Below, piece by piece: positions 51,655-63,760 of a DNA stretch of 64,000 nucleotides; within the stretch, counting starts at the first letter, position 1, and every line of letters starts with the position of its first letter. This DNA comes from Obrimoposthia wandeli (taxonomy: Eukaryota). A program made the position numbers and the translations under genes. The stretch spans positions 1-64,000 of the forward strand of contig CDROCS010005499.1 in assembly GCA_977020255.1 (NCBI GenBank), given 5' to 3'. Under the pieces are notes generated by a model, which saw only the letters and a list, made by a program, of their open reading frames with translations, made no database searches and had not been told where the DNA came from.

Positions 51655-51854
51655 CGACAGCCGAAAGCGGATTACTCTTGTCCTTGTTGTCACCATTGAA
51701 TACGATGTCTGGTGTATTTCGAACGGGGTAAAATAGCGTTATATAAGGATAACGGTTCAGCTTTCCCTTCTGCGTAACATTTACCTATATAAGAGAACTC
51801 GGGCTTATTCAAGACGTCGGATAGGTGTCGGCTTCGCGATACATATCCTTATCT
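51655..51854 (+). mobile_element. IS91-like element right-end remnant 1
   Basis: CPCCH transposase C-terminus, then shared end …GGATAGGTGTCGGCTTCGCGATACATATCCTTATCT|GTTA. Confidence 0.7.
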
Positions 51855-51930
51855 GTTAAGGCGAGAACACACTAAACGCCATCGCAAAACTGCGAAGTAA
51901 AACGCGTCAACTCAATATTATCATAGGGCG
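51855..51930 (-). repeat. Degenerate attC remnant
   Basis: ACACTAAACG…AAAACTGCGAAGTAAAACGCGTCAACT shared with the sites at 58120, 60290 and 63040. Confidence 0.55.
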
Positions 51931-51959
51931 GCTCTACGAGAGTTCTATCATTTATTTCA

Positions 51960-52343
51960 CTAGTTCAAACGCCTGAAGACCATCACTTGAAAGTTTGTCC
52001 AGTAACCTACGTTTAAAAATGAAAGCCAATAAAAACATAGAGCGAGTGCTACTGAAGATAGAGGACCACAAAGCAGAATCAAGACTTGCCTGTTTTTACC
52101 CTCTCTAGAACTGATGCTACAAAAACCGTTGAACATCGAGAACGGAGCTACATAAATATAGAGTTTCCCTAGTTTGAGTTTTACTGAATGTTCAAGGTTA
52201 CCCATTTTAATTACTACGCGGTAACCTCTTATAAGCTGAGGTATCGCATGCCCTAACTCGTGCAGTAAAGTTACGAGAGGCATTGTAATCAGAAAGCCCA
52301 CAGCATAACTTGCCGCTTCATATATAATGATTTTGAACTCCAT
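51960..52343 (-). CDS. M50-family (site-2) metallopeptidase-like cassette gene, possibly truncated
   Basis: LLHELGHA HExxH within a TM segment; LLCGPL motif; short. Confidence 0.7.
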   Translation of the reverse strand: MEFKIIIYEAASYAVGFLITMPLVTLLHELGHAIPQLIRGYRVVIKMGNLEHSVKLKLGKLYIYVAPFSMFNGFCSISSREGKNRQVLILLCGPLSSVALALCFYWLSFLNVGYWTNFQVMVFRRLN

Positions 52344-52520
52344 TTCGCTTTAGCGTCTAAGGTAAACGCCCTGTGCGGATCCGCATGCAGGGTGTTCACG
52401 ATTATAACCCTGATGAAGTTCACAGCAATCAGGCATAGATAGGATTGATTAACAAAACAAGGTAATAATGGTTGAATGATGTACCACCATTTTTCTCGGT
52501 TGATGTAAGCAGGATGCTTT

Positions 52521-53492
52521 ATGAATCAAATGGACGCTTTCCGATGCGCTAGTATTGGAATTTTACTTGGCTTAGTTGGTTGTACTTCACCCCCTTCAAA
52601 CGGGGTCGATGCGATTGTTATAGAGACCACCTCAACAACCCAATCCTTACAAATTGATGGCTTAAAGCATTGTAATAATGCTAACGATAACACCATTAAC
52701 ATAAACCCAAATGAGCCATTAACGATTATAGTACATGGTTGTTTTTCATCGGCGGGTCGGTTTCGAACCCTTGCGGATGTATATGCTTTGTACGATCAAC
52801 AAGCCATCTGTTTTGAGTACGATGATAGAAAAAGCCTTGAAGTAACGTCAGGCGAATTAGTTTCCGCATTGAATCAACTGAGTAAACAGAATCCACAACA
52901 ATCGCTGCACGTTATTGCACACAGCCAAGGTGGCTTGATTGCTCGAAGAGCGTTAACGTCAGATAGACACGACCAAAAAACCGTGAATACAGAACAGTTG
53001 CAACTCACCACGGTATCTTCTCCTTTCAATGGTATTAATGCTTCTTCTCACTGTGGAATAACATCACTTCGCATTGTGTCGTTAGGCGTTGTTGATCTGA
53101 TTTGCTATGCCGTGACGGGTGAAAAATATCTACAAATTCCACCGAATGTTGAGTTTATACAACAGCCGGGCAACCTGCTGCCTTCCGTCTCACAGCATTT
53201 AGTCATTAAAACCGATGAGCGTGATAAGTGTCGCCGTGAAGATGGTAATGGAGGGTGTGCAGAAGATGATTATGTATTTAGTGTTAATGAACAATCAAAT
53301 CAAAGTGTTGATGGTGTAGTGCAAGCCAATGCTGTTACCGTAGCCGCAGGGCATGTGGAAATAGTAGGAAATGGGAACTCAGTACCAACGGATCTGATTG
53401 CTATTTTAAAAGAGAAAAATCTTCTGTTGGATAAGAAAGGCGTTAATGAACTAGAGCAAGCTAACCAAATTGAAGCGCTTTACTTTCATTAA
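52521..53492 (+). CDS. Lipoprotein alpha/beta-hydrolase (lipase/esterase-like)
   Basis: Lipobox LVGC, HSQGG nucleophile elbow, SSPFNG; opposite strand to most cassettes. Confidence 0.8.
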   Translation: MNQMDAFRCASIGILLGLVGCTSPPSNGVDAIVIETTSTTQSLQIDGLKHCNNANDNTININPNEPLTIIVHGCFSSAGRFRTLADVYALYDQQAICFEYDDRKSLEVTSGELVSALNQLSKQNPQQSLHVIAHSQGGLIARRALTSDRHDQKTVNTEQLQLTTVSSPFNGINASSHCGITSLRIVSLGVVDLICYAVTGEKYLQIPPNVEFIQQPGNLLPSVSQHLVIKTDERDKCRREDGNGGCAEDDYVFSVNEQSNQSVDGVVQANAVTVAAGHVEIVGNGNSVPTDLIAILKEKNLLLDKKGVNELEQANQIEALYFH

Positions 53493-53555
53493 TTTCCAAA
53501 AATAATGATAATGCTCGCATTCAGTGGAGCGATATTCGCTTGAGTACATGATGAA

Positions 53556-53785
53556 TCATGCCTCAACTGCCTCCTTTTTCTCTGGTATGAAAACAAACAG
53601 TACCGAAGTAGTAATAAGCAATACACCGCACATTACCCAGTTAATCGTTATGCCATATTGCTCAGATATATAACCTAAAAGTAATGACGCAACGACCGCA
53701 CCACTAGTAACAATACACGAACTGACAGACAACATAGTTGAGCGATAACTTTTTTTTGGATTAGCGTTTAGTGAAACCACTTCAG
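53556..53785 (-). pseudogene. 3' fragment of an MFS transporter gene
   Basis: YRSTMLSVSS…LLGYISEQYGITINWVMCGVLL C-terminal TMs; the 5' part of the track ORF is antisense IS sequence. Confidence 0.65.
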
Positions 53786-54002
53786 AGGCGTGTGCGTGAT
53801 TACGGTTGAAAAGCGGATTACTTGTGTACTTATTATAACTATTTAATGCGGTGTCTGGCGTATTTCGACCGAGATAAGATAGTGTCATATAAGGATAATG
53901 GTTCAGCTTTTACTTCTTCGTAAGATTTTTTTATATATAAAATAACTAGGGCTTGTTCAATACTTCGGATAGGTGCCGGCTTCGCGACACATATCCTTAT
54001 CT
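53785..54002 (+). mobile_element. IS91-like element right-end remnant 2
   Basis: RRVRDYG motif plus the shared hairpin end, CCTTATCT|GTTA at 54003. Confidence 0.75.
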
Positions 54003-54011
54003 GTTATGTAT

Positions 54012-54358
54012 CTACGACGAAACCTTTGCAGCAAGATTTGATACAAGCCTTCCCCACTTATCTCTTTGTACTTGTGTTGAGTTCATCACTGGGCCTATAT
54101 AAGTTGCCGATATCTGCTTAAAGCCACAAAACTCAAGAATTGTACCTTTAAACTGTTTATATACTGGATTACCTTGAAACCAACGATAATAAAATGGTGG
54201 AGTGTCCATCGTTAATATAATATCCGCAGTTCTACCTTGAAGTAACTTCTCAGGAATTGCCCCTTTTCCTTTATACTTAAATGCGAAGCCTGGTAAAAAA
54301 GTTCGATCAATTAACCCTTTTTACTTCGCTGGCATGCCACCCCACCAAACAGGAACAA
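54012..54358 (-). pseudogene. Flavodoxin-fold NAD(P)H oxidoreductase remnant
   Basis: Hand translation PVWW/GMPAK*KGLIDRTFLPGFAFKY…TMDTPPFYY: 5' truncation, a frameshift and an in-frame stop. Confidence 0.75.
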
Positions 54359-54361
54359 CAG

Positions 54362-54769
54362 TTATGTGATCTTTCGTTTAAGCGCAATTTCTTGTTCCTT
54401 GAACAGTGCATAATCACTGGGTTTTCTACTTTTTGCTGCTGTGAACCATTGAATACCTGTGTCATCTAAATGGTTAAATTCCAATCGAAACTCATACTTA
54501 CTACTTGTGACAAGGCCTAAAATTGCTCCGAAAATAAAACCCACAACTGGGAGGTATGAAGAAAATGCCAATCCGTATTCCTGATTTTCAGACGGGATAA
54601 ATATAAACAATAAGCTCGAAGCTACTACTCCAAGTAATACCATCTTAAGTAAATGGTCTTTCCAACAGAGTACATTCACTTGCACACCAACAACTTTACT
54701 TAGATCGTATGTATCCGAATTTACACGCAATTTATTATCTAATTGCTGAATTAATACTGAACTAGCCAT
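54362..54769 (-). CDS. Cassette-encoded membrane protein (DUF6232-like, tentative)
   Basis: Two TM helices; core GTTATGT (54803-54809) upstream; stop overlaps R'' ACATAAC. Confidence 0.65.
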   Translation of the reverse strand: MASSVLIQQLDNKLRVNSDTYDLSKVVGVQVNVLCWKDHLLKMVLLGVVASSLLFIFIPSENQEYGLAFSSYLPVVGFIFGAILGLVTSSKYEFRLEFNHLDDTGIQWFTAAKSRKPSDYALFKEQEIALKRKIT

Positions 54770-54810
54770 TAAAATCTCCTCATGTAGTAAATTTTCAACA
54801 TCACATAACG

Positions 54811-54997
54811 TCGATTCCTTTTATTAACAACAGCTTACTAACTTAAAACGGCAAGGTAAACGCCCTACAACCATTGAAGTCTATTCACGTGCGGTGTGTC
54901 GCATTACACATCACTTGATAAAGCACCCGATACCCTTTTAACCGACATTCTTACCCAGCAATAAGTAGGCCTATTGTATCAATACATATCCTTACCT
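54811..54997 (+). mobile_element. Tyrosine-recombinase N-terminal (SAM-like) remnant fused to an IS91-like right end
   Basis: QLTNLKRQGKRPTTIEVYSRAV reading; ends CATATCCTTACCT|GTTA at 54998. Confidence 0.7.
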
Positions 54998-55021
54998 GTT
55001 AGCTGTTGGAATTTTCAGGAG

Positions 55022-55534
55022 TCAATTCCAAGCTCTTTCATACGCGTCAATCAGATTAAATGGTTTTTTTAGCAATTCAATAGAGCGTAATTCATACTTA
55101 ATACTTTTTGGTAATTCATGGTATTTTTTCTCAATATTTAGGTCTACTACTGAAAACATAAGTTTCTTCATCGTAAGAATTTGTTTTGAGATATGATTTG
55201 GTTTCTTCGTCGTTTCATTTGAAACTTCCAGCACTAGCAATATTCTCATTAACTCACTGTATTCAGGCTGAGAGCACTCTCTAATAGCACTTTGATTCAA
55301 ATAACCTAACCCTTCCGCTGCAACGTTAGGTAACTGTTTCAATTTACCGATCAGTGACTTTGAGAGCGTCTCACTCTGGCTTTTAGAAATACACTCTGAA
55401 TGTTTACTTTCATACTCAACGAACTTTTGTTGAAGAATAGCTGAACCGAAATTGAGATTATCATCTACAACTGCATAACTAAATGAAGAGCAGAACAAGA
55501 AAAAAGCCACAATTAATAAATAGTTAAACTTCAT
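55022..55534 (-). CDS. Exported hypothetical protein (second gene of a two-gene cassette)
   Basis: Signal peptide MKFNYLL…SYA; ATGA overlap with the upstream gene. Confidence 0.6.
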   Translation of the reverse strand: MKFNYLLIVAFFLFCSSFSYAVVDDNLNFGSAILQQKFVEYESKHSECISKSQSETLSKSLIGKLKQLPNVAAEGLGYLNQSAIRECSQPEYSELMRILLVLEVSNETTKKPNHISKQILTMKKLMFSVVDLNIEKKYHELPKSIKYELRSIELLKKPFNLIDAYERAWN

Positions 55535-55941
55535 TTTATTTTGCACCCATAATGAACAGATTTCCAAAATGACCTTTCTTTGGGGCTAATTTTACTTCTG
55601 ATCATCTGAAGGCCTGCAATAGTACTTATTTGATTACTAGCATACCTATCTAAAGATGACAGAGACTTAAAAAAGTACTCCCAATTTACTGAGTAGATAC
55701 TATATGACGTTTGACTTATATCACTTGATAAAGTTTTAGATGTAAAACTTTTCTCAATAAAATTTGAAGGTCCCTTTGTTTTTACAGCCAAACCGCCAAA
55801 AATCAACGCAAGTTGACCAATAACAATTGCTACCCACCCTTCTTTAAAATTCTGATTCATATCATTTATTGCATTAATAGCGTCTTGGCTTTCTTTATCG
55901 AAAGTCAGGTTAATAATAGGCGGACATATACTTTTACTCAT
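55531..55941 (-). CDS. Hypothetical protein with one hydrophobic segment
   Basis: ORF with 4-nt overlap to the next gene; cassette core GTTAGCG at 56108-56114. Confidence 0.5.
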   Translation of the reverse strand: MSKSICPPIINLTFDKESQDAINAINDMNQNFKEGWVAIVIGQLALIFGGLAVKTKGPSNFIEKSFTSKTLSSDISQTSYSIYSVNWEYFFKSLSSLDRYASNQISTIAGLQMIRSKISPKERSFWKSVHYGCKIK

Positions 55942-56145
55942 TTTACATCCCAATCTAGAACGAATATTTCTTCAGAATACATTGGTTACTTCAACCACAA
56001 TGTGAAGATATCTGTCCTCGAGAGCGACTTAGCTCAAATTCATCCCCTTCTAAATATCAATTACAATATTTTTGGAAGACTATCACATACACCCTTTTAT
56101 TGAGTGCCGCTAACGCCTAACATTTACTGCACATTAAAATTAAGG

Positions 56146-56346
56146 TTACCTCGTCCGCCCCCCAAATGGGTCGTGGATTGTCGTCATATTAGGCGGGGAA
56201 TATCAATTTTCGCTACCTCAATAGCCACACTAAAACGACTCAAATTCAAACATCACCTGCTGTGATATTTCTCAGGCTAATATTGCAGCATTTATTAACA
56301 AACGAGTACGTGATTACGGTTTACTTCGTGGTTCACACCCTTATCT
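56146..56346 (+). mobile_element. IS91-family (Y2) transposase remnant with right end
   Basis: KWVVDCRH, FRYLNS…LILQHLL and RVRDYGLLRG fragments; ends CCCTTATCT|GCTA. Confidence 0.75.
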
Positions 56347-56364
56347 GCTAGGCGCTGTTCACAA

Positions 56365-57354
56365 CTACTTAATCGCTTTTTTTATCCATGGGCCAATAAG
56401 GTCGGAAGCATTCAGAATTATTGAAAAATGATTTTCTTTATCAACTATTTCAATTTCCTTTTTTGCCTTTTTATCACTGTTTTTTTGTGCAAACATGGTT
56501 ACTTTTAATGGGTCAAACGCCTCATCTTGCTTTCCTATCCACAACCCAAACTGTTGTACATCAGATAATTGAATATCAGGCGAATGAGGCGTAACAGCGT
56601 TTGACATATTAACGGTGTTAAATGGAACAATTTCAGGGTTATCCCTTAACACTGCGTCTGGAAAGTTGAACCTCACCGCCTTTGAATGCCCTAAAAACAA
56701 ACCACCACTCATAGTATTTATGACAAAGTCTGACGTTTTTACTGTAGAAAACTCAAAGCCTTTATTTTCACCCTCATCGTAATTCGTCTCTGAACGAAAA
56801 CCAAAATATGGCGAGAGGAATACATACCCATCAACTTCAGCTTTTTGAGCCCAACTAGAATAATTAAGTACTAGGCCTGCACCAGCTGAGTGCCCCCCGA
56901 CAAAGATAGGAAGATTAGGATATTTATCACGAGCAATTTCAACCATTGTATTAGTGTCTGACCACACTTGTTCAACATTTGGAGTGTCCCCTCGATCTCC
57001 CCCAGATCTGCCATGCCCACGAATATCTGGCATATATACGGCTATATTAAAACCATCACGTAAACCAGCGCCGATGTGATTATAGGTAAGCCCACTATGA
57101 GCACCCGCTCCATGATAAAAAATTAGAATTGCTTGTGCATGTTGTGGAAGATAAGAGCGATACGCCAAAGAAACATCATCTGTTGCCTGTATATATTGAA
57201 GAGGTTCCATCGTTTTTTTAGGCGCATTTTTTATCTCAACAAGCGAGAAAAACTCTTCAGTATTTTGCTCATCTGAACTCGCGTATAAATTATTAGTCAG
57301 AGAAATAGATAACAACATTATCCCTGCATTCATAATCATAGATTTTAATTTCAT
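56365..57354 (-). CDS. Exported alpha/beta hydrolase (lysophospholipase-like)
   Basis: YHGAG, DIRGHGRS, GHSAG nucleophile, C-terminal ENH; signal peptide. Confidence 0.85.
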   Translation of the reverse strand: MKLKSMIMNAGIMLLSISLTNNLYASSDEQNTEEFFSLVEIKNAPKKTMEPLQYIQATDDVSLAYRSYLPQHAQAILIFYHGAGAHSGLTYNHIGAGLRDGFNIAVYMPDIRGHGRSGGDRGDTPNVEQVWSDTNTMVEIARDKYPNLPIFVGGHSAGAGLVLNYSSWAQKAEVDGYVFLSPYFGFRSETNYDEGENKGFEFSTVKTSDFVINTMSGGLFLGHSKAVRFNFPDAVLRDNPEIVPFNTVNMSNAVTPHSPDIQLSDVQQFGLWIGKQDEAFDPLKVTMFAQKNSDKKAKKEIEIVDKENHFSIILNASDLIGPWIKKAIK

Positions 57355-57469
57355 TAACAGTTCCTTTATTAAATAACTATCCAAAATTGGACTTTATTCC
57401 ATTAGCTCTGCCACATTAAAATATACAATATGACTACAAAGGTGGCGCACGGATGCGTATTCATGCGCT

Positions 57470-57525
57470 TAACACTTCACATCCCTACAAAACCCTTTTT
57501 CAATTCAATAAGTAGACACGTTAGT
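57470..57525 (+). mobile_element. Degenerate IS4 (IS10-like) left-end fragment
   Basis: CACATCCCTACAAA…TTCAATAAGTAGACAC shared with the 62316 and 63588 copies. Confidence 0.5.
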
Positions 57526-57635
57526 CACCTAAAAATCTTATGGTTTCATCACATATACCCAGATAAATAAAACAATACGAGTAGGATTCAAATACGGTAC
57601 AATGCGGTTTTGCAAACCCTGCTAATTGGCGAATT

Positions 57636-58037
57636 ATGAAAGATTGTAATCAATGCGGTAAATGTTGCATCAAATACGGAGGAGGTGACATTTCGGCGGC
57701 AAAAGATGAAATTGACCTATGGGAAATATTTAACCCAGAAATCTTCAAATTCGTTAAAAATGGTGAGATATGGTTCGATCCTGAATCTGGAACAATACTT
57801 ACAGAATGCCCTTTTCTTGAACTTGCACCCAAAATAAACGCTCTCGCCCCCAATAAATATACATGCAGCATTTACTTAAATAGACCTGAAGACTGCCGTC
57901 ATTACCCTAGTCTCATACCAGAAATGATTAGAGATGAATGTGAAATGATTGAAGTAATAGACTTGGAAAAACCGAAACAAGCTCAAAGAAGGCTAGATTT
58001 ATTGATGAAAGGTAGTCGCCCTCCAAGCTACTCGTAG
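57636..58037 (+). CDS. YkgJ-family cysteine-cluster protein
   Basis: CNQCGKCC, CPFL, CSIYLNRPEDCRHYP. Confidence 0.88.
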   Translation: MKDCNQCGKCCIKYGGGDISAAKDEIDLWEIFNPEIFKFVKNGEIWFDPESGTILTECPFLELAPKINALAPNKYTCSIYLNRPEDCRHYPSLIPEMIRDECEMIEVIDLEKPKQAQRRLDLLMKGSRPPSYS

Positions 58038-58071
58038 AACAAATCAACGATGGCATGTAATGACTTAACCT

Positions 58072-58178
58072 AAAACACAAAAGATTGAAAGCAAGATGCG
58101 TGTCACGACCTACACCAAACGCACTAAACCCCACACCAAAAATGTGGAGTAAAATGCGTCAACTTGTTATTTTTATCT
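58072..58178. repeat. IS4 left-end fragment fused to an attC left arm
   Basis: AAAAGATTGAAAGCAAGATGCGTG (transposase start) followed by …GCGTCAACTTGTTATTTTTATCT. Confidence 0.55.
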
Positions 58179-58185
58179 TGTGATA

Positions 58186-58545
58186 TCAAAAAGCAGCTTT
58201 CCACTGTTCAGTGTCAACAAACCACCTTTCCTCGTGAATTTTTCCGTCAATAAACTTGAATAACACTGAAAACTGAGAGCCAGATATTTTCTCAGACTTC
58301 CAATCAACAATCGAGATGACTTCATTTTCACCTTCAATTTGTCGCAACTCTGTTATTTCAAAACCAGGAGGAAGGAGCTCGCCAAGGCAATCCAAAGCAG
58401 AGCGGAACGCAGCTCGTCCTTCTAAAACATCTGTTTGCCCCGGCATGATGAAAACCATTTTCTCTGCGTAGTCAGCCACTAGCGTATCAAAATCTCCAGC
58501 ACCTACTGCTTCCCAACCTCTCTGTACAATATCAGCTAAATTCAT
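58186..58545 (-). CDS. SnoaL/NTF2-like protein
   Basis: GDFDTLVADYAE…LEGRAAF…FKFIDGKIHEER. Confidence 0.8.
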   Translation of the reverse strand: MNLADIVQRGWEAVGAGDFDTLVADYAEKMVFIMPGQTDVLEGRAAFRSALDCLGELLPPGFEITELRQIEGENEVISIVDWKSEKISGSQFSVLFKFIDGKIHEERWFVDTEQWKAAF

Positions 58546-58664
58546 AGCCCTTACCCTCATAATTGATTATTCATCCACAAAACACTCGGATTACTTGTTC
58601 CTACGGATGTGTGTTTTTTGAACAATTTAATTATAGAAGATACATAATTATTAGTTCACTAGAA

Positions 58665-58867
58665 AACACTACATACTGAAGTGGCATACCTAAAGGATTA
58701 AGACGTGTACGTGATTACCTGCATTAGATGATAAATCCGTAAGTCGAAAAGCTGATTACTTTTGTCCTTAGTGTATTCCGACCAAGATTAGATAGCGTTA
58801 TATAAAGTAGCTCGGGCTTGTTCAACACTTCGGATAGGTGTCGGCTTCACGACACATATCCTTATCT
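58665..58867 (+). mobile_element. IS91-like element right-end remnant
   Basis: IPKGLRRVRDY motif plus shared hairpin end, CCTTATCT|GTTA at 58868. Confidence 0.78.
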
Positions 58868-58882
58868 GTTAGGTTTAGTCGT

Positions 58883-59233
58883 TTAACCTAAATTTTCCCA
58901 TTTCGATAACTTACAACGTGAAGATTTCCATTTGTAGTAATGTGCTACTGCAAAGCCAAAGACTCCACCTATGGTTGATGCGGAGACAAACGATTGAAGT
59001 ATAGAAAATTCCATGTCTTGCCAACTGATAAACCACATTAACGTTCCGTAAATGAAGGTAAAAAAGATATATGATGTTAACCAGTTAATCCAAAAACTTC
59101 GATAAAATGGTGGAGGTGATTGAAAACCTAATTTCCTAAGAATTCTGATATAAATAGGGTTAGAACTGGATTCTCTAATTCCAGCTTTATTGAGCTCGGC
59201 ATGAGCTGCCTTCAACTTATTCTCATATGACAT
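58883..59233 (-). CDS. Cassette membrane protein (DUF6404-like)
   Basis: LRKLGFQSPPPFY…; C-terminal CKLSKWENL; bounded by GTTAGGT/ACCTAAC. Confidence 0.7.
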   Translation of the reverse strand: MSYENKLKAAHAELNKAGIRESSSNPIYIRILRKLGFQSPPPFYRSFWINWLTSYIFFTFIYGTLMWFISWQDMEFSILQSFVSASTIGGVFGFAVAHYYKWKSSRCKLSKWENLG

Positions 59234-59339
59234 GTATACTTCCTTCGGAAAACTCGAGCTAAACTGTTAATTTTACAGTAAGATCTTGATGACATGCTGC
59301 GAGGCAATTCAAATGTAAGTTGATTAGTTTCAGAAAAGA

Positions 59340-59447
59340 ACCTAACGCCTGCAATGTGGCCAGCTTTACACCACACTAAACTTGAACACCGTTACCACAA
59401 ATACCATGGGAGCTGAAGGTAAAAGGTCCTCGGCTATCCGATTATGT
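59340..59447 (-). repeat. Degenerate VCR-like attC
   Basis: R' GTTAGGT; interior ACACTAAACTTGAACACCGTTACCAC…ATGGGA resembles the bottom strand of Vibrio repeats; R'' ACATAAT overlaps a stop codon. Confidence 0.65.
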
Positions 59448-62271: not shown

Positions 62272-62300
62272 ATCCGACCTTGATTGATGAACTTAATTTC

Positions 62301-63086
62301 ATTTAACGCTGAACACTTACGAATCCCCACAAAGTACCTTTGCAGTTCAATAAGTAGACACATATTACCTTCAGATCTAATAAATTCATCATAAACACAA
62401 AAGATTGAAAGCAGGATGCGTGACATTAAAAGATTACACGAATAGCTGGAAAACCAATGCCCTAACATTCACAAAAAGAGACTAAATTAACTCATGAATT
62501 CTGTGTAAACTTGCTTATCAAGAATGTACTTACGCTTACTTTTCGAAGACGTTCGCTTCCTTCTAGGGCTAAAACGAAGCACTGTATTAAGCGCGTTAAT
62601 CGTTTATTAGGTAACAATCACCTGCACCACGACAGACTCGATATTTATCGTTGGCACTATCATCAATTTTGTTAGGTCAACCCACTACCTATTGTCTTAG
62701 TCGATTGGGCTGATATTCACGAATACGAACGACTCATGGTACTAAGAGCTTCTATTGCTGTAGAAGGACGTTCTGTTACGCTTTTCGAGCAAACTTTTAC
62801 CTTCGCATGTCATCCTCATCGCTATAAAAAAACACCTAAAAAACGTAAAAATCGACGATTTATATCCTTTGTTAGGCTAGAAAAATAGGCCTTCCGACGG
62901 CTGGAATATCACATCAACGAACCCGTAATACGTTGGGCGCAATGCACCCTTATTCTAATGGCGAGGAAGAGTTATCGTGCGTAAATTATGTGGGGATTCC
63001 CCAGCGCCGAACATAAGTTGCGCCAGACTAACTAAACAAGCGCACAAAACTGCGGAGTAAAACGTGTCAACTTGATGTTTTTAAAT
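62301..63086 (-). repeat. attC interrupted by IS4 (88 bp when reconstructed)
   Basis: After removing the IS and one TSD: R'' ATTTAAA, L'' ACATCAAG, L' CTTATGT, 5-nt spacer, R' GTTAAAT; extrahelical base in L''. Confidence 0.8.
62316..63004 (+). mobile_element. Internally deleted IS10-like (IS4 family) element
   Basis: IRs CT(TAC/GGG)GAATCCCCACA; 9-bp TSD CGCTGAACA/CGCCGAACA; transposase fragments MRDI…LENQCPNIHKKRL, KTKHCIKRVNRLLGN, PIVLVDWADI with stops. Confidence 0.88.
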
Positions 63087-63091
63087 GCGAT

Positions 63092-63544
63092 TCAACGTAA
63101 TCTACACACTAACCGCAACATATCTTTATGCTGAATACCATTTTCAAAGATTGGTTCATCGTAATTATCGAGAAAAAAATCCTGTAAAATAGAATCTACT
63201 CTAAAACCGTACCGTTGATAAAACGATAATTGATACCCAAAAGCACCCGTTCCAAGTTCAACTTTACTGTAGCCAGTTGTAGATAATTCTTTTAATACAA
63301 ATTGAAGTAACTTTGAACCAATACCCTTTTTCTGATACTCCAGTTCTGTTGCAACATTATAGATTTCGGAAGTTGATTCGTTCAGCGGCTTAGTTATGCA
63401 AATACTCACTATTACGTCACCATCAAATGCAGCAAAACAATCTGAGCCGTCTAAATATTTTTTGATGCATGTTTCAGAAGGGTCAGCTTCAAGTAGTAAT
63501 TCCATTGGAGCTAACTTTGCTGATATTCGTTTAAACTGAATCAA
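63092..63544 (-). CDS. GNAT acetyltransferase cassette
   Basis: LLLEADPS, YQKKGIGSKL, LSFYQRYGFR, GIQHKDM; bounded by GTTAAAT and ATTTAAA. Confidence 0.85.
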   Translation of the reverse strand: MIQFKRISAKLAPMELLLEADPSETCIKKYLDGSDCFAAFDGDVIVSICITKPLNESTSEIYNVATELEYQKKGIGSKLLQFVLKELSTTGYSKVELGTGAFGYQLSFYQRYGFRVDSILQDFFLDNYDEPIFENGIQHKDMLRLVCRLR

Positions 63545-63587
63545 GCCATTTCCCTCTTAGAGCCCTTGAAGCATTTAACGCCGAACA

Positions 63588-63760
63588 CTTACGAATTCCC
63601 ACAAAATACCTTTGCAGTTCAATAAGTAGACATGCACCTTCTGATCTAATGAATTCACCTAAATTAAAAAAGATTGAAAACAAGATACGTGATATTCAAA
63701 CACTACACGAGTCGCTGGAAAATCAATGCCCTAACATACACAAAAATAGACTCAAAATGT
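63588..63760 (+). mobile_element. IS10-like left end, second copy
   Basis: Same junction TAACGCCGAACA|CTTACGAAT; MRDIQTLHESLENQCPNIHKNRLK. Confidence 0.8.

What the first reader, a model, noticed from the sequence alone, without database searches (positions are those of the whole stretch)
51655..58874. IS91-like (Y2 transposase plus tyrosine recombinase) element ends precisely at attC GTTA boxes five times
Seen: five same-orientation remnants end at CC(T/C)TA(T/C)CT-like termini immediately before GTTA (51855, 54003, 54998, 58868) or GCTA (56347). In four of them that tetramer is the bottom strand of the R'' box just after a cassette stop codon; in the first it resembles an L-box. They carry Y2-transposase motifs (WVVDC, LQH, PKGLRRVRDY, CPCC) and, in three copies, the subterminal hairpin GGATAGGTG(T/C)CG-GCTT-C(G/A)CGA(C/T)ACATATCC; one carries an integrase SAM-domain start. 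Known: IS91-family elements insert oriIS next to a fixed tetranucleotide without a TSD and can transpose one-ended; attC-targeting is known for group IIC introns and IS1111-attC. Inference: an attC-targeting rolling-circle element, antisense to the cassettes, that decapitates attC sites and deletes adjacent DNA. It could be an under-described parasite or mobiliser of integron arrays.
Basis: partly seen in the sequence, partly recalled or inferred. Interest (0 to 1): 0.76.

Follow-up and report, generated by a model that had tools for sequence, protein, structure and literature searches.

The report
IS91-type element that targets attC
The window holds five decayed copies of a small jumping gene (rolling-circle transposase plus a Xer/IntI-like recombinase) that inserts, always backwards, at one exact base of integron recombination sites; this barely described third kind of integron parasite is common in marine bacteria and occurs once in a clinical resistance integron.

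Summary
A 12-nt terminus occurs exactly five times in the window, all on the + strand, each followed by GTTA (once GCTA).

Four termini abut the R'' box of a minus-strand cassette, 8-24 nt from its stop codon. The fifth lies inside an attC.

The fragments belong to an IS91-family element. A full 2.3-kb copy, with a Xer/IntI-like recombinase and an HUH-Y2 transposase, lies on another contig of the same assembly, in the same context.

In 66 loci from about 25 marine gammaproteobacterial genomes the same end abuts GTTA (45) or ATTA (15).
- An antisense ORF ends within 40 nt in 35/56 sites, against 7% of control GTTA sites (P = 4e-25).
- Rejoined flanks fold as attC in 22/37, against 4.6% of controls.

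An E. coli IncC plasmid carries a copy inside attC of aadA1. The empty site in R100 shows a clean insertion.

Refinements:
- The crossover is TTG|TTA, that is G|TT of the bottom-strand R''.
- Intact insertions delete nothing, so the window's truncations are secondary.
- The joined ends fold into an attC-like hairpin.

Which enzyme carries out integration is open. This scan reached the same reading earlier on other contigs of this assembly. The literature holds only one passing remark.

The parts
51655..51855 (+). Remnant r1: transposase C-terminus (ADYSCPCCHH-stop, 51667-51699), 3' untranslated region, oriIS hairpin and terminus. The junction G51855|TTAAGG lies inside an attC body, not at R''.
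53750..54003 (+). Remnant r2: transposase fragment (…LQRRVRDYG, 53780-53805), an internal deletion, then the 3' region with hairpin and terminus. Junction G54003|TTATGT.
54810..54998 (+). Remnant r3: start of the recombinase gene (about residues 9-48, SAM-like domain) joined by an internal deletion to the last ~14 nt of the element. Its left edge touches the R' half-site ACATAAC (54803-54809). Junction G54998|TTAGCT.
56122..56347 (+). Remnant r4: transposase fragment (about residues 205-300, WVVDC at 56164-56183, RVRDYG at 56303-56319) joined to the last ~11 nt of the element. Its left edge follows CGCTAAC-GCCTAAC (56108-56121). Junction G56347|CTAGGC (mutated R'').
58579..58660 (+). Fragment r5a: a second, older piece of the same transposase-C-terminus/3' region, lying upstream of r5. 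It is either a tandem or repeated insertion at one site, or an internal duplication.
   Evidence: (alignment A4)
58684..58868 (+). Remnant r5: transposase fragment (IPKGLRRVRDY, 58689-58718) and the 3' region with two internal deletions. It keeps the 5' box GTTCAAC (58820-58826), the hairpin and the terminus. Junction G58868|TTAGGT.
54003..54809 (-). Cassette whose R'' (GTTATGT, bottom strand) carries r2 and whose start half-site is ACATAAC (7/7 complementary). Its coding region is broken.
54998..56114 (-). Cassette (ORFs 55022-55567 and 55531-55953) whose R'' GTTAGCT carries r3. Start half-site CGCTAAC (6/7).
56347..57473 (-). Cassette (alpha/beta-hydrolase-like ORF 56365-57384) whose R'' GCTAGGC carries r4. 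Start half-site GCTTAAC (5/7).
58868..59346 (-). Cassette (ORF 58883-59233) whose R'' GTTAGGT carries r5. Start half-site ACCTAAC (7/7).

Best explanation
The five stretches are fossils of an IS91-family rolling-circle insertion sequence.

Anatomy: the element is about 2.3 kb. It runs from a terIS end, through a Xer/IntI-like tyrosine recombinase gene and an overlapping HUH-Y2 transposase gene, to about 250 nt of non-coding DNA and an oriIS end with a subterminal hairpin.

Target: the preferred target is the junction between the unpaired spacer and the R'' box on the bottom strand of integron attC sites. The crossover is (T/C)(T/A)G|TTA(G/T). This places the oriIS end a few bases from the stop codon of the upstream cassette, with the element's genes antisense to the cassettes. 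Insertion is clean: no duplication and no loss.

Mechanism, inferred by analogy with IS91: the transposase makes a single-stranded circle of the antisense strand. It inserts the circle at a tetranucleotide (GTTA) related to its own terIS cleavage site (GTTG). Three things together make integron arrays the main landing place:
- attC sites carry TTGTTA at this spot.
- attC sites are often single-stranded or folded.
- Cassette arrays tolerate insertions.

In this window: the lineage has no intact copy on the parts of contig C5499 that I could read (4 of 16 ten-kb stretches). After insertion the copies lost their terIS side and the inner part of the attC by later deletions. Only oriIS-proximal pieces remain, fused to R''. 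The affected cassettes therefore no longer have a normal attC.
For: Family:
- Pfam Y2_Tnp and Zn_Tnp_IS91, Phage_integrase and SAM_4.
- NCBIfam IS91 transposase at 361 bits against a cut-off of 125.

A full copy in the same context:
- On contig C321 the rest of the attC lies on the terIS side.
- In this assembly, 15 of 15 oriIS ends are followed by GTTA or GCTA.

Survey of 66 loci:
- GTTA at 45 ends and ATTA at 15.
- Left flanks are attC remainders.
- An antisense ORF of at least 60 codons ends within 40 nt in 35/56 sites, against 152/2157 control GTTA sites (P = 4e-25).
- The TAA stop codon is itself the TTA of GTTA in 15/56.
- Rejoined flanks pass a constrained attC fold test in 22/37, against 23/500 controls.

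Empty-site proof: attC of aadA1 in R100 compared with both junctions in E. coli plasmid RCS41_p.

Crossover point:
- All 15 ATTA junctions have an A, whereas 14/14 uninterrupted attC-like sites in the same genome have a G.
- The three bases before the left end vary with the target: TAG and CTG.

Ends:
- oriIS hairpin with compensatory changes in 4 of 6 pairs.
- terIS palindrome.

The IS91 paradigm is taken from PMC13181058: a tetranucleotide next to oriIS, a related terIS cleavage site, a bottom-strand single-stranded circle as the active intermediate, and one-ended transposition.
Against: - No transposition was observed. All mechanism is inferred from static sequence.
- At least 8 of 36 complete copies are not in attC. 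Examples are 5 of 7 in a Nitrincola MAG, one in a group II intron ORF and one in a CRISPR spacer. Part of the enrichment could therefore reflect survival in a tolerant region.
- The automated attC test passes only 59% of sites. My estimate of about 28/36 rests on reading the flanks by eye.
- The one-base shift of the crossover rests on one sub-lineage.
- The role of the recombinase is unknown.
- No intact copy of the window's own lineage was found, and no integron integrase was found on this contig.
Confidence: 0.75

Rival explanations
1. Integration is done by a tyrosine recombinase, not by the HUH transposase. The transposase only peels off a single-stranded circle. The joined ends fold into an attC look-alike. 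The element's own Xer/IntI-like recombinase (or the host IntI) then exchanges one strand at AA|C with the folded top strand of an attC.
For: - The predicted junction folds into a 55-58 nt hairpin with a 7-bp terminal box, unpaired spacers and a bulged inner stem (z = -3.3 to -6.2).
- The joining point falls at AA|C of a GTTCAAC box, the step that IntI cleaves.
- The common variant GTCCAAC is a G-T wobble on the antisense strand only.
- A distant relative shows a compensatory pair, GTTGGAC/GTCCAAC.
- The recombinase has intact catalytic motifs. Its nearest solved relatives are XerA (4a8e, 5hxy), then IntI4 and XerD.
- A group II intron has inserted at GT|TGAAC of the element's box, as if it were an attC.
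Against: - For IS91 the transposase alone inserts the single-stranded circle (PMC13181058).
- GTTNAAC boxes are near-palindromes that contain the family's usual tetranucleotides, so the pairing may be incidental.
- Non-attC insertions share only TTG|TTA.
- A distant IS91 clade with a similar recombinase shows no attC association.
- Standard IntI geometry would put the element at R' in the cassette orientation, which is not what is seen.
Confidence: 0.15
2. There is no real attC targeting. The element needs only the tetranucleotide or hexamer, and copies accumulate in cassette arrays because insertions there are harmless and arrays are rich in TTGTTA.
For: - Uninterrupted attC sites in these genomes carry (C/T)TT-GTTA at the spot.
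- Non-attC insertions exist.
- Canonical IS91 members need only a tetranucleotide.
Against: - From base composition, a 4-5 Mb AT-rich genome should hold several thousand TTGTTA sites but only tens to hundreds of attC. Yet at least 60% of complete copies are in attC.
- Even within array-rich flanks, control GTTA sites pass the tests 9 to 13 times less often.
- One clinical class 1 integron with few attC sites was hit at exactly this position.
Confidence: 0.08
3. The shared end is an attC family or another repeat unrelated to any transposase, and the coding fragments are coincidental.
For: The right end together with the adjoining R'' passes a crude attC fold test.
Against: - The same end is continuous with intact transposase and recombinase genes in 40 or more complete copies across many genera.
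- The window fragments carry transposase and recombinase codons in the right order and strand.
Confidence: 0.02

Closest known systems
IS91 family (IS91, IS801, IS1294) and the ISfinder entries with an upstream integrase gene such as ISShvi3
   Same: - HUH-Y2 transposase with an N-terminal zinc-binding domain.
- Unlike ends (terIS and oriIS) with subterminal palindromes.
- oriIS abuts a target tetranucleotide, with no target duplication.
- The terIS cleavage site is related to the target.
- Signs of one-ended transposition.

ISShvi3 was seen 'adjacent to an attC site' in a Shewanella integron (PMC9229058).
   Different: - The target is GTTA (TTG|TTA), not GTTC/CTTG. It coincides with the attC R'' box, which gives site, strand and orientation specificity for integrons.
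- It carries a Xer/IntI-like recombinase instead of orf121.
- The joined ends fold like a short attC.
- Nobody has described attC targeting for this family in the papers I could search.
IS1111-attC group (IS110/IS1111 family, DEDD transposase guided by a seeker/bridge RNA)
   Same: Insertion sequences that insert orientation-specifically into attC sites of gene cassettes.
   Different: The transposase is unrelated, target choice is RNA-guided, and the position in attC is different. The present element has no DEDD enzyme.
Group IIC-attC introns
   Same: [quoted passage not shown] This is the same region, strand and orientation as this element.
   Different: They are retroelements (a ribozyme plus a reverse transcriptase), not DNA transposons. 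One such intron has itself inserted into this element's end on the same contig.
ISCR1 in complex class 1 integrons
   Same: An IS91-like rolling-circle element associated with integrons. Its oriIS end is kept, its terIS end is lost, and it mobilises adjacent DNA.
   Different: ISCR1 sits beyond the 3' conserved segment, not in attC. It has no recombinase gene. Its transposase is only distantly related (27 bits against the ISCR model).

Membership tests
IS91 family | HUH-Y2 rolling-circle transposase with a zinc-binding N-terminus | tested here: met
   Pfam Y2_Tnp E = 2e-42 and Zn_Tnp_IS91 E = 4e-27. NCBIfam NF033538 at 361 bits against a cut-off of 125. The window fragments match by tblastn.
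IS91 family | Two unlike ends with subterminal palindromes and no terminal inverted repeats | tested here: met
   The right-end hairpin is conserved, with compensatory changes in 4 of 6 pairs. The left end is TTGTTGAACGAA followed by the palindrome GCCGC-N4-GCGGC.
IS91 family | oriIS end abuts a fixed target tetranucleotide, with no target-site duplication | tested here: met
   GTTA at 45 and ATTA at 15 of 66 ends. Comparing the empty and occupied attC of aadA1 shows no gain or loss; the only shared stretch is 5 nt of identity between the element ends and the target.
IS91 family | Rolling-circle transposition through a single-stranded circle; one-ended transposition | not testable with these tools
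   Only indirect evidence: a 4041-nt block (two cassettes, the attC remainder and the element) is 99.8% identical at two sites 2 Mb apart. It ends exactly at the oriIS end.
Integron integrase (IntI) | The recombinase scores above the IntI family cut-off and carries the IntI-specific insertion | tested here: not met
   TIGR02249 scores 162 bits against a cut-off of 265, in two stretches. It scores equally well against XerA and XerD. The nearest solved structures are XerA-like. True intI genes elsewhere in the assembly score 395-470 bits.
IS1111-attC group | DEDD (IS110-type) transposase | tested here: not met
   Only Y2_Tnp and tyrosine-recombinase domains were found.
Integron gene cassette | Bounded by attC crossover points and mobilised by IntI | tested here: inconclusive
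   The joined ends fold like a short attC. Each junction keeps a GTT/AAC-closed hairpin. However, the element sits at R'' in reverse orientation, and copies do not carry a constant attC with them.

The most novel reading that the evidence does not exclude
The element is a hybrid of a rolling-circle transposon and an integron cassette.

1. Its transposase releases a single-stranded circle.
2. The joined ends of the circle form a working attC mimic.
3. A tyrosine recombinase (its own, or the host IntI acting on the unusual strand) integrates it at AA|C of the top-strand R'' box.

The insertion rebuilds an attC-like hairpin on each side. The element and its neighbouring cassettes would then stay recombinogenic and could be moved together.
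Probability: 0.18. Interest if true: 0.85.

Novelty: new variant of a known kind. Interest (0 to 1): 0.66.

Why it matters
Only two kinds of mobile element were known to home in on attC sites: IS1111-attC elements and group IIC-attC introns. This would be a third, with unrelated enzymes, converging on the same strand and nearly the same base.

It is common in the large chromosomal integrons of cold-marine Gammaproteobacteria: Moritella, Colwellia, Psychromonas, Motilimonas, Pseudoalteromonas and Vibrionaceae.

It has also reached a class 1 resistance integron on a conjugative IncC plasmid in E. coli.

Effects on integrons:
- It splits attC sites. This can freeze cassettes in place or fuse them, and it puts antisense genes in the path of cassette transcription.
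- In at least one case it appears to have carried two cassettes to a new place.

It also offers a natural system in which an HUH nuclease and a Xer/IntI-like recombinase are encoded together, next to DNA that folds like an integron site.

Tried and rejected
1. A first attC test required R' and R'' of the rejoined site to be complementary. It was wrong in principle, because in an array the R' half belongs to the next cassette. I replaced it with fold-based tests.
2. Tests based on the unconstrained minimum-energy fold miss degenerate or long attC sites. They also cannot tell the top strand from the bottom strand. Orientation was settled by ORF ends instead.
3. The same scan finds almost no canonical attC in the window's own array. 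These sites are long and degenerate, so I did not map the whole array.
4. A 5-bp target duplication (TTGTT) was considered and rejected. At sites where the left bases differ (TAG, CTG) the right junction keeps TTTG.
5. Termination of one-ended transposition at the left edge of the shared Psychromonas block was considered. That edge is an ordinary cassette boundary in both copies, so later IntI-mediated change is equally likely.
6. Reading the whole contig failed.
7. No close full-length relative of the window's lineage was found.
8. No intI was found on C5499.


Full report
**What is in the window**

From about 50.6 kb to the end, the window is a cassette array. Most ORFs lie on the minus strand.

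A 12-nt terminus, C[CT]TTA[CT]CT[GA][CT]TA, occurs five times and nowhere else, always on the + strand. The G of GTTA/GCTA is at 51855, 54003, 54998, 56347 and 58868.

Three copies (r1, r2, r5) keep about 80 nt of a conserved end with a hairpin (alignment A4). Two copies (r3, r4) keep only the last 11-14 nt, joined to coding fragments.

The coding fragments are real (and direct reading):
- Recombinase residues 1-48 at 54792-54929.
- Transposase residues about 217-300 at 56158-56319.
- Shorter stretches: RVRDY and a CPCC C-terminus.

Four junction heptamers lie 8-24 nt beyond the stop codon of a minus-strand ORF. Each is complementary (7/7, 6/7, 5/7 and 7/7) to the half-site at the far boundary of the same cassette. 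That is the signature of a cassette's own R'' box.

The first junction lies inside the body of an attC of the array's own repeat family.

**What the fragments come from**

The assembly has 1.35 Gb in 6912 contigs, many of them bacterial.

Contig C321 carries a full copy in the same setting. Between two cassettes, and antisense to them, it has:
- A 295-aa tyrosine recombinase (Phage_integrase plus SAM_4).
- An overlapping 357-aa transposase (Y2_Tnp plus Zn_Tnp_IS91; NCBIfam IS91 family at 361 bits).
- About 250 nt of non-coding DNA.
- The same hairpin and terminus, followed by GTTA, whose TTA is the cassette's stop codon.

On the other side, the element starts with TTGTTGAACGAA plus a short palindrome. 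It is preceded by the rest of the attC, from R' through the stem to the unpaired spacer.

All 15 right ends that I read in this assembly are followed by GTTA, or GCTA once.

Several copies lie a few kb from true integron integrase genes on C253 and C2866. No integron integrase gene was found on the window's contig.

**Is attC targeting general?**

A scan of one genome per species returned 66 loci. The genera include Moritella, Colwellia, Pseudocolwellia, Psychromonas, Motilimonas, Pseudoalteromonas, Vibrio, Aliivibrio, Photobacterium and Nitrincola.

Profile searches placed the right end in 66 places. The flank starts with GTTA in 45 and ATTA in 15.

| Test | Element sites | Control GTTA sites, same loci |
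|---|---|---|
| Antisense ORF of at least 60 codons ends within 40 nt of the junction | 35/56 | 152/2157 (odds ratio 22, P = 4e-25) |
| The stop codon is the TTA of GTTA itself | 15/56 | 73/2157 |
| Rejoined flanks fold as an attC-like hairpin with the AAC/GTT pairs enforced | 22/37 | 23/500 |

For the 37 elements with both ends and enough flank, reading the flanks by eye suggests about 28 of 36 distinct sites are attC or attC remnants.

Clear exceptions exist:
- Five of seven copies in a Nitrincola MAG.
- One copy in a group II intron reverse-transcriptase ORF.
- One copy in a spacer of a repeat array that I read from memory as a type I-F CRISPR array.

All exceptions sit at (T/C)(T/A)G|TTA.

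**An empty site**

A protein search of plasmids found a 56%-identical copy in E. coli IncC plasmid RCS41_p.

It lies in a class 1 integron, between aadA1 and qacEdelta1 and antisense to the cassettes. The order is intI1, aac(6')-Ib3, aadA2, cmlA1, aadA1, the element, qacEdelta1, sul1.

I aligned the uninterrupted attC of aadA1 from plasmid R100 with both junctions. The insertion is clean. The only ambiguity is 5 nt (TTGTT) that the target shares with both ends of the element.

This copy is the only complete one in about 72,000 plasmids. Shewanella ANA-3 holds a 252-nt remnant. The element is absent from 5,426 complete E. coli genomes.

**The exact crossover**

In one sub-lineage, the base after the terminus is A in 15 of 15 junctions. 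The following bases are typical R'' boxes, and the TAA stop codons are in place. In loci of the same genome (the Psychromonas MAG that holds most ATTA junctions), 14/14 uninterrupted attC-like sites found by my fold scan have G, about half of them clear CTT-GTTA sites. That base therefore travels with the element.

Conversely, the three bases before the left end vary with the site: TAG and CTG.

The consistent reading is as follows. The element runs from TTGAAC… to …TTATTTG, and it enters between G and TT of TTG|TTA. On the other strand this is AA|C of R''. It is the same step that IntI cuts in R', but in the other box.

This inference rests on one sub-lineage.

**Mechanism**

The anatomy matches the IS91 paradigm as set out in PMC13181058:
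- A tetranucleotide next to oriIS.
- A related cleavage site at terIS (here GTTG against GTTA).
- Subterminal palindromes.
- A bottom-strand single-stranded circle as the active form.
- Frequent one-ended transposition.

The oriIS hairpin is supported by compensatory changes in 4 of 6 pairs.

I therefore favour transposase-driven insertion. Three things together would favour attC: it carries the hexamer, it is often single-stranded or folded, and arrays tolerate insertions.

Two observations keep another reading open.

1. The predicted circle junction folds into a 55-58 nt hairpin. It has a 7-bp terminal box (GTTCAAC/GTTGAAC), unpaired spacers and a bulged stem, so it is built like a short attC. 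The joining point lies at AA|C. The frequent variant GTCCAAC is a wobble pair only on the antisense strand, the strand expected to be displaced.
2. The recombinase is an intact Xer/IntI-like enzyme.

Against a recombinase-driven step:
- The boxes are near-palindromes made of the family's usual tetranucleotides.
- Non-attC sites share only the hexamer.
- A distant IS91 clade with a similar recombinase shows no attC link.

**Consequences for the array**

Intact insertions delete nothing. The window's remnants have lost the terIS side and the inner attC.

In r3 and r4, what remains between the R' half-site and R'' is element debris instead of the attC stem. The left edges of r3 and r4 lie at or within 7 nt of an R' box and next to AAC in the element. 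This hints at integrase-mediated deletion with a secondary site, but two cases prove nothing.

Upstream of r5 lies a second fragment of the same region. It suggests repeated insertion at the same GTTA, which survives each insertion.

In a Psychromonas MAG, a 4041-nt block (two cassettes, the attC remainder and the element) is 99.8% identical at two places 2 Mb apart. It ends exactly at the oriIS end. This fits one-ended transposition carrying cassettes.

**Novelty**

Full-text searches found no description of attC targeting by IS91-family elements. One paper on Shewanella integrons saw ISShvi3 'adjacent to an attC site' and explicitly did not count it as interrupting attC.

Group IIC-attC introns use the same strand and region.

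Two earlier notes of this scan, on other contigs of this assembly, reached the same reading. I saw them after my own analysis, and my results agree with them.

**Limits**

- There is no experimental evidence.
- The attC classifier is home-made.
- Only a quarter of the contig could be read.
- The host organism of the contig was not identified.

Noticed in passing
L028 6537-8427 (contig C5499, about 140.5-142.4 kb): A group II intron (Rfam D1-D4 models, 121 and 66 bits) lies on the minus strand inside another remnant of the element. It splits the box GTTCAAC from the hairpin (exon junction GT|TGAAC on the intron strand), as if the element's end were an attC. The last 43 nt of the element and GTTAGGC follow.
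   Followed up: partly
L116 (E. coli IncC plasmid RCS41_p, NZ_LT985243.1): A complete copy of a related element sits in attC of aadA1 in a class 1 integron (intI1, aac(6')-Ib3, aadA2, cmlA1, aadA1, element, qacEdelta1, sul1). It is the only complete copy in the plasmid collection.
   Followed up: yes
L090 (Nitrincola MAG OZ251574.1): One copy is inserted in a spacer of an array whose 28-nt repeats (GTTAGCTGCCGCACACGCAGCTTAGAAA) look like type I-F CRISPR repeats.
   Followed up: no
L057 4777-4861 (Pseudoalteromonas MAG) and the right end in L101: The last ~42 nt of the right end are duplicated in tandem in L057. In the distant Oxalobacteraceae copy (L101) a 22-nt terminal unit is repeated three times. 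Both may be traces of repeated initiation or abortive events at oriIS.
   Followed up: no
L118 2450-2752 (Shewanella sp. ANA-3 plasmid): A 252-nt remnant (3' non-coding region plus oriIS) is joined directly to an almost complete attC remainder. It looks as if both genes were removed precisely.
   Followed up: no
window 62300-63755: Two copies of another repeat (families D3-D5, about 120 nt at 83% identity) follow cassette starts. Another note of the scan calls it an IS10-like element in attC.
   Followed up: no
window 52521-53492 and 57636-58037: Two ORFs inside the array lie on the + strand, opposite to the other cassettes: a lipase-like protein of 323 aa and a cysteine-rich protein of 133 aa.
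   Followed up: no
L039/L040 (contigs C1143, C3914) and L038 (C253 at 1.62 Mb): A distant IS91 clade (31% identity) also has a recombinase gene upstream of the transposase. It ends in CCTAAACA, with unrelated flanks and no sign of attC.
   Followed up: partly
L119 (Photobacterium damselae plasmid pPHDD1): A related copy on a large conjugative plasmid lies next to a group II intron. Its left flank resembles an attC remainder.
   Followed up: partly
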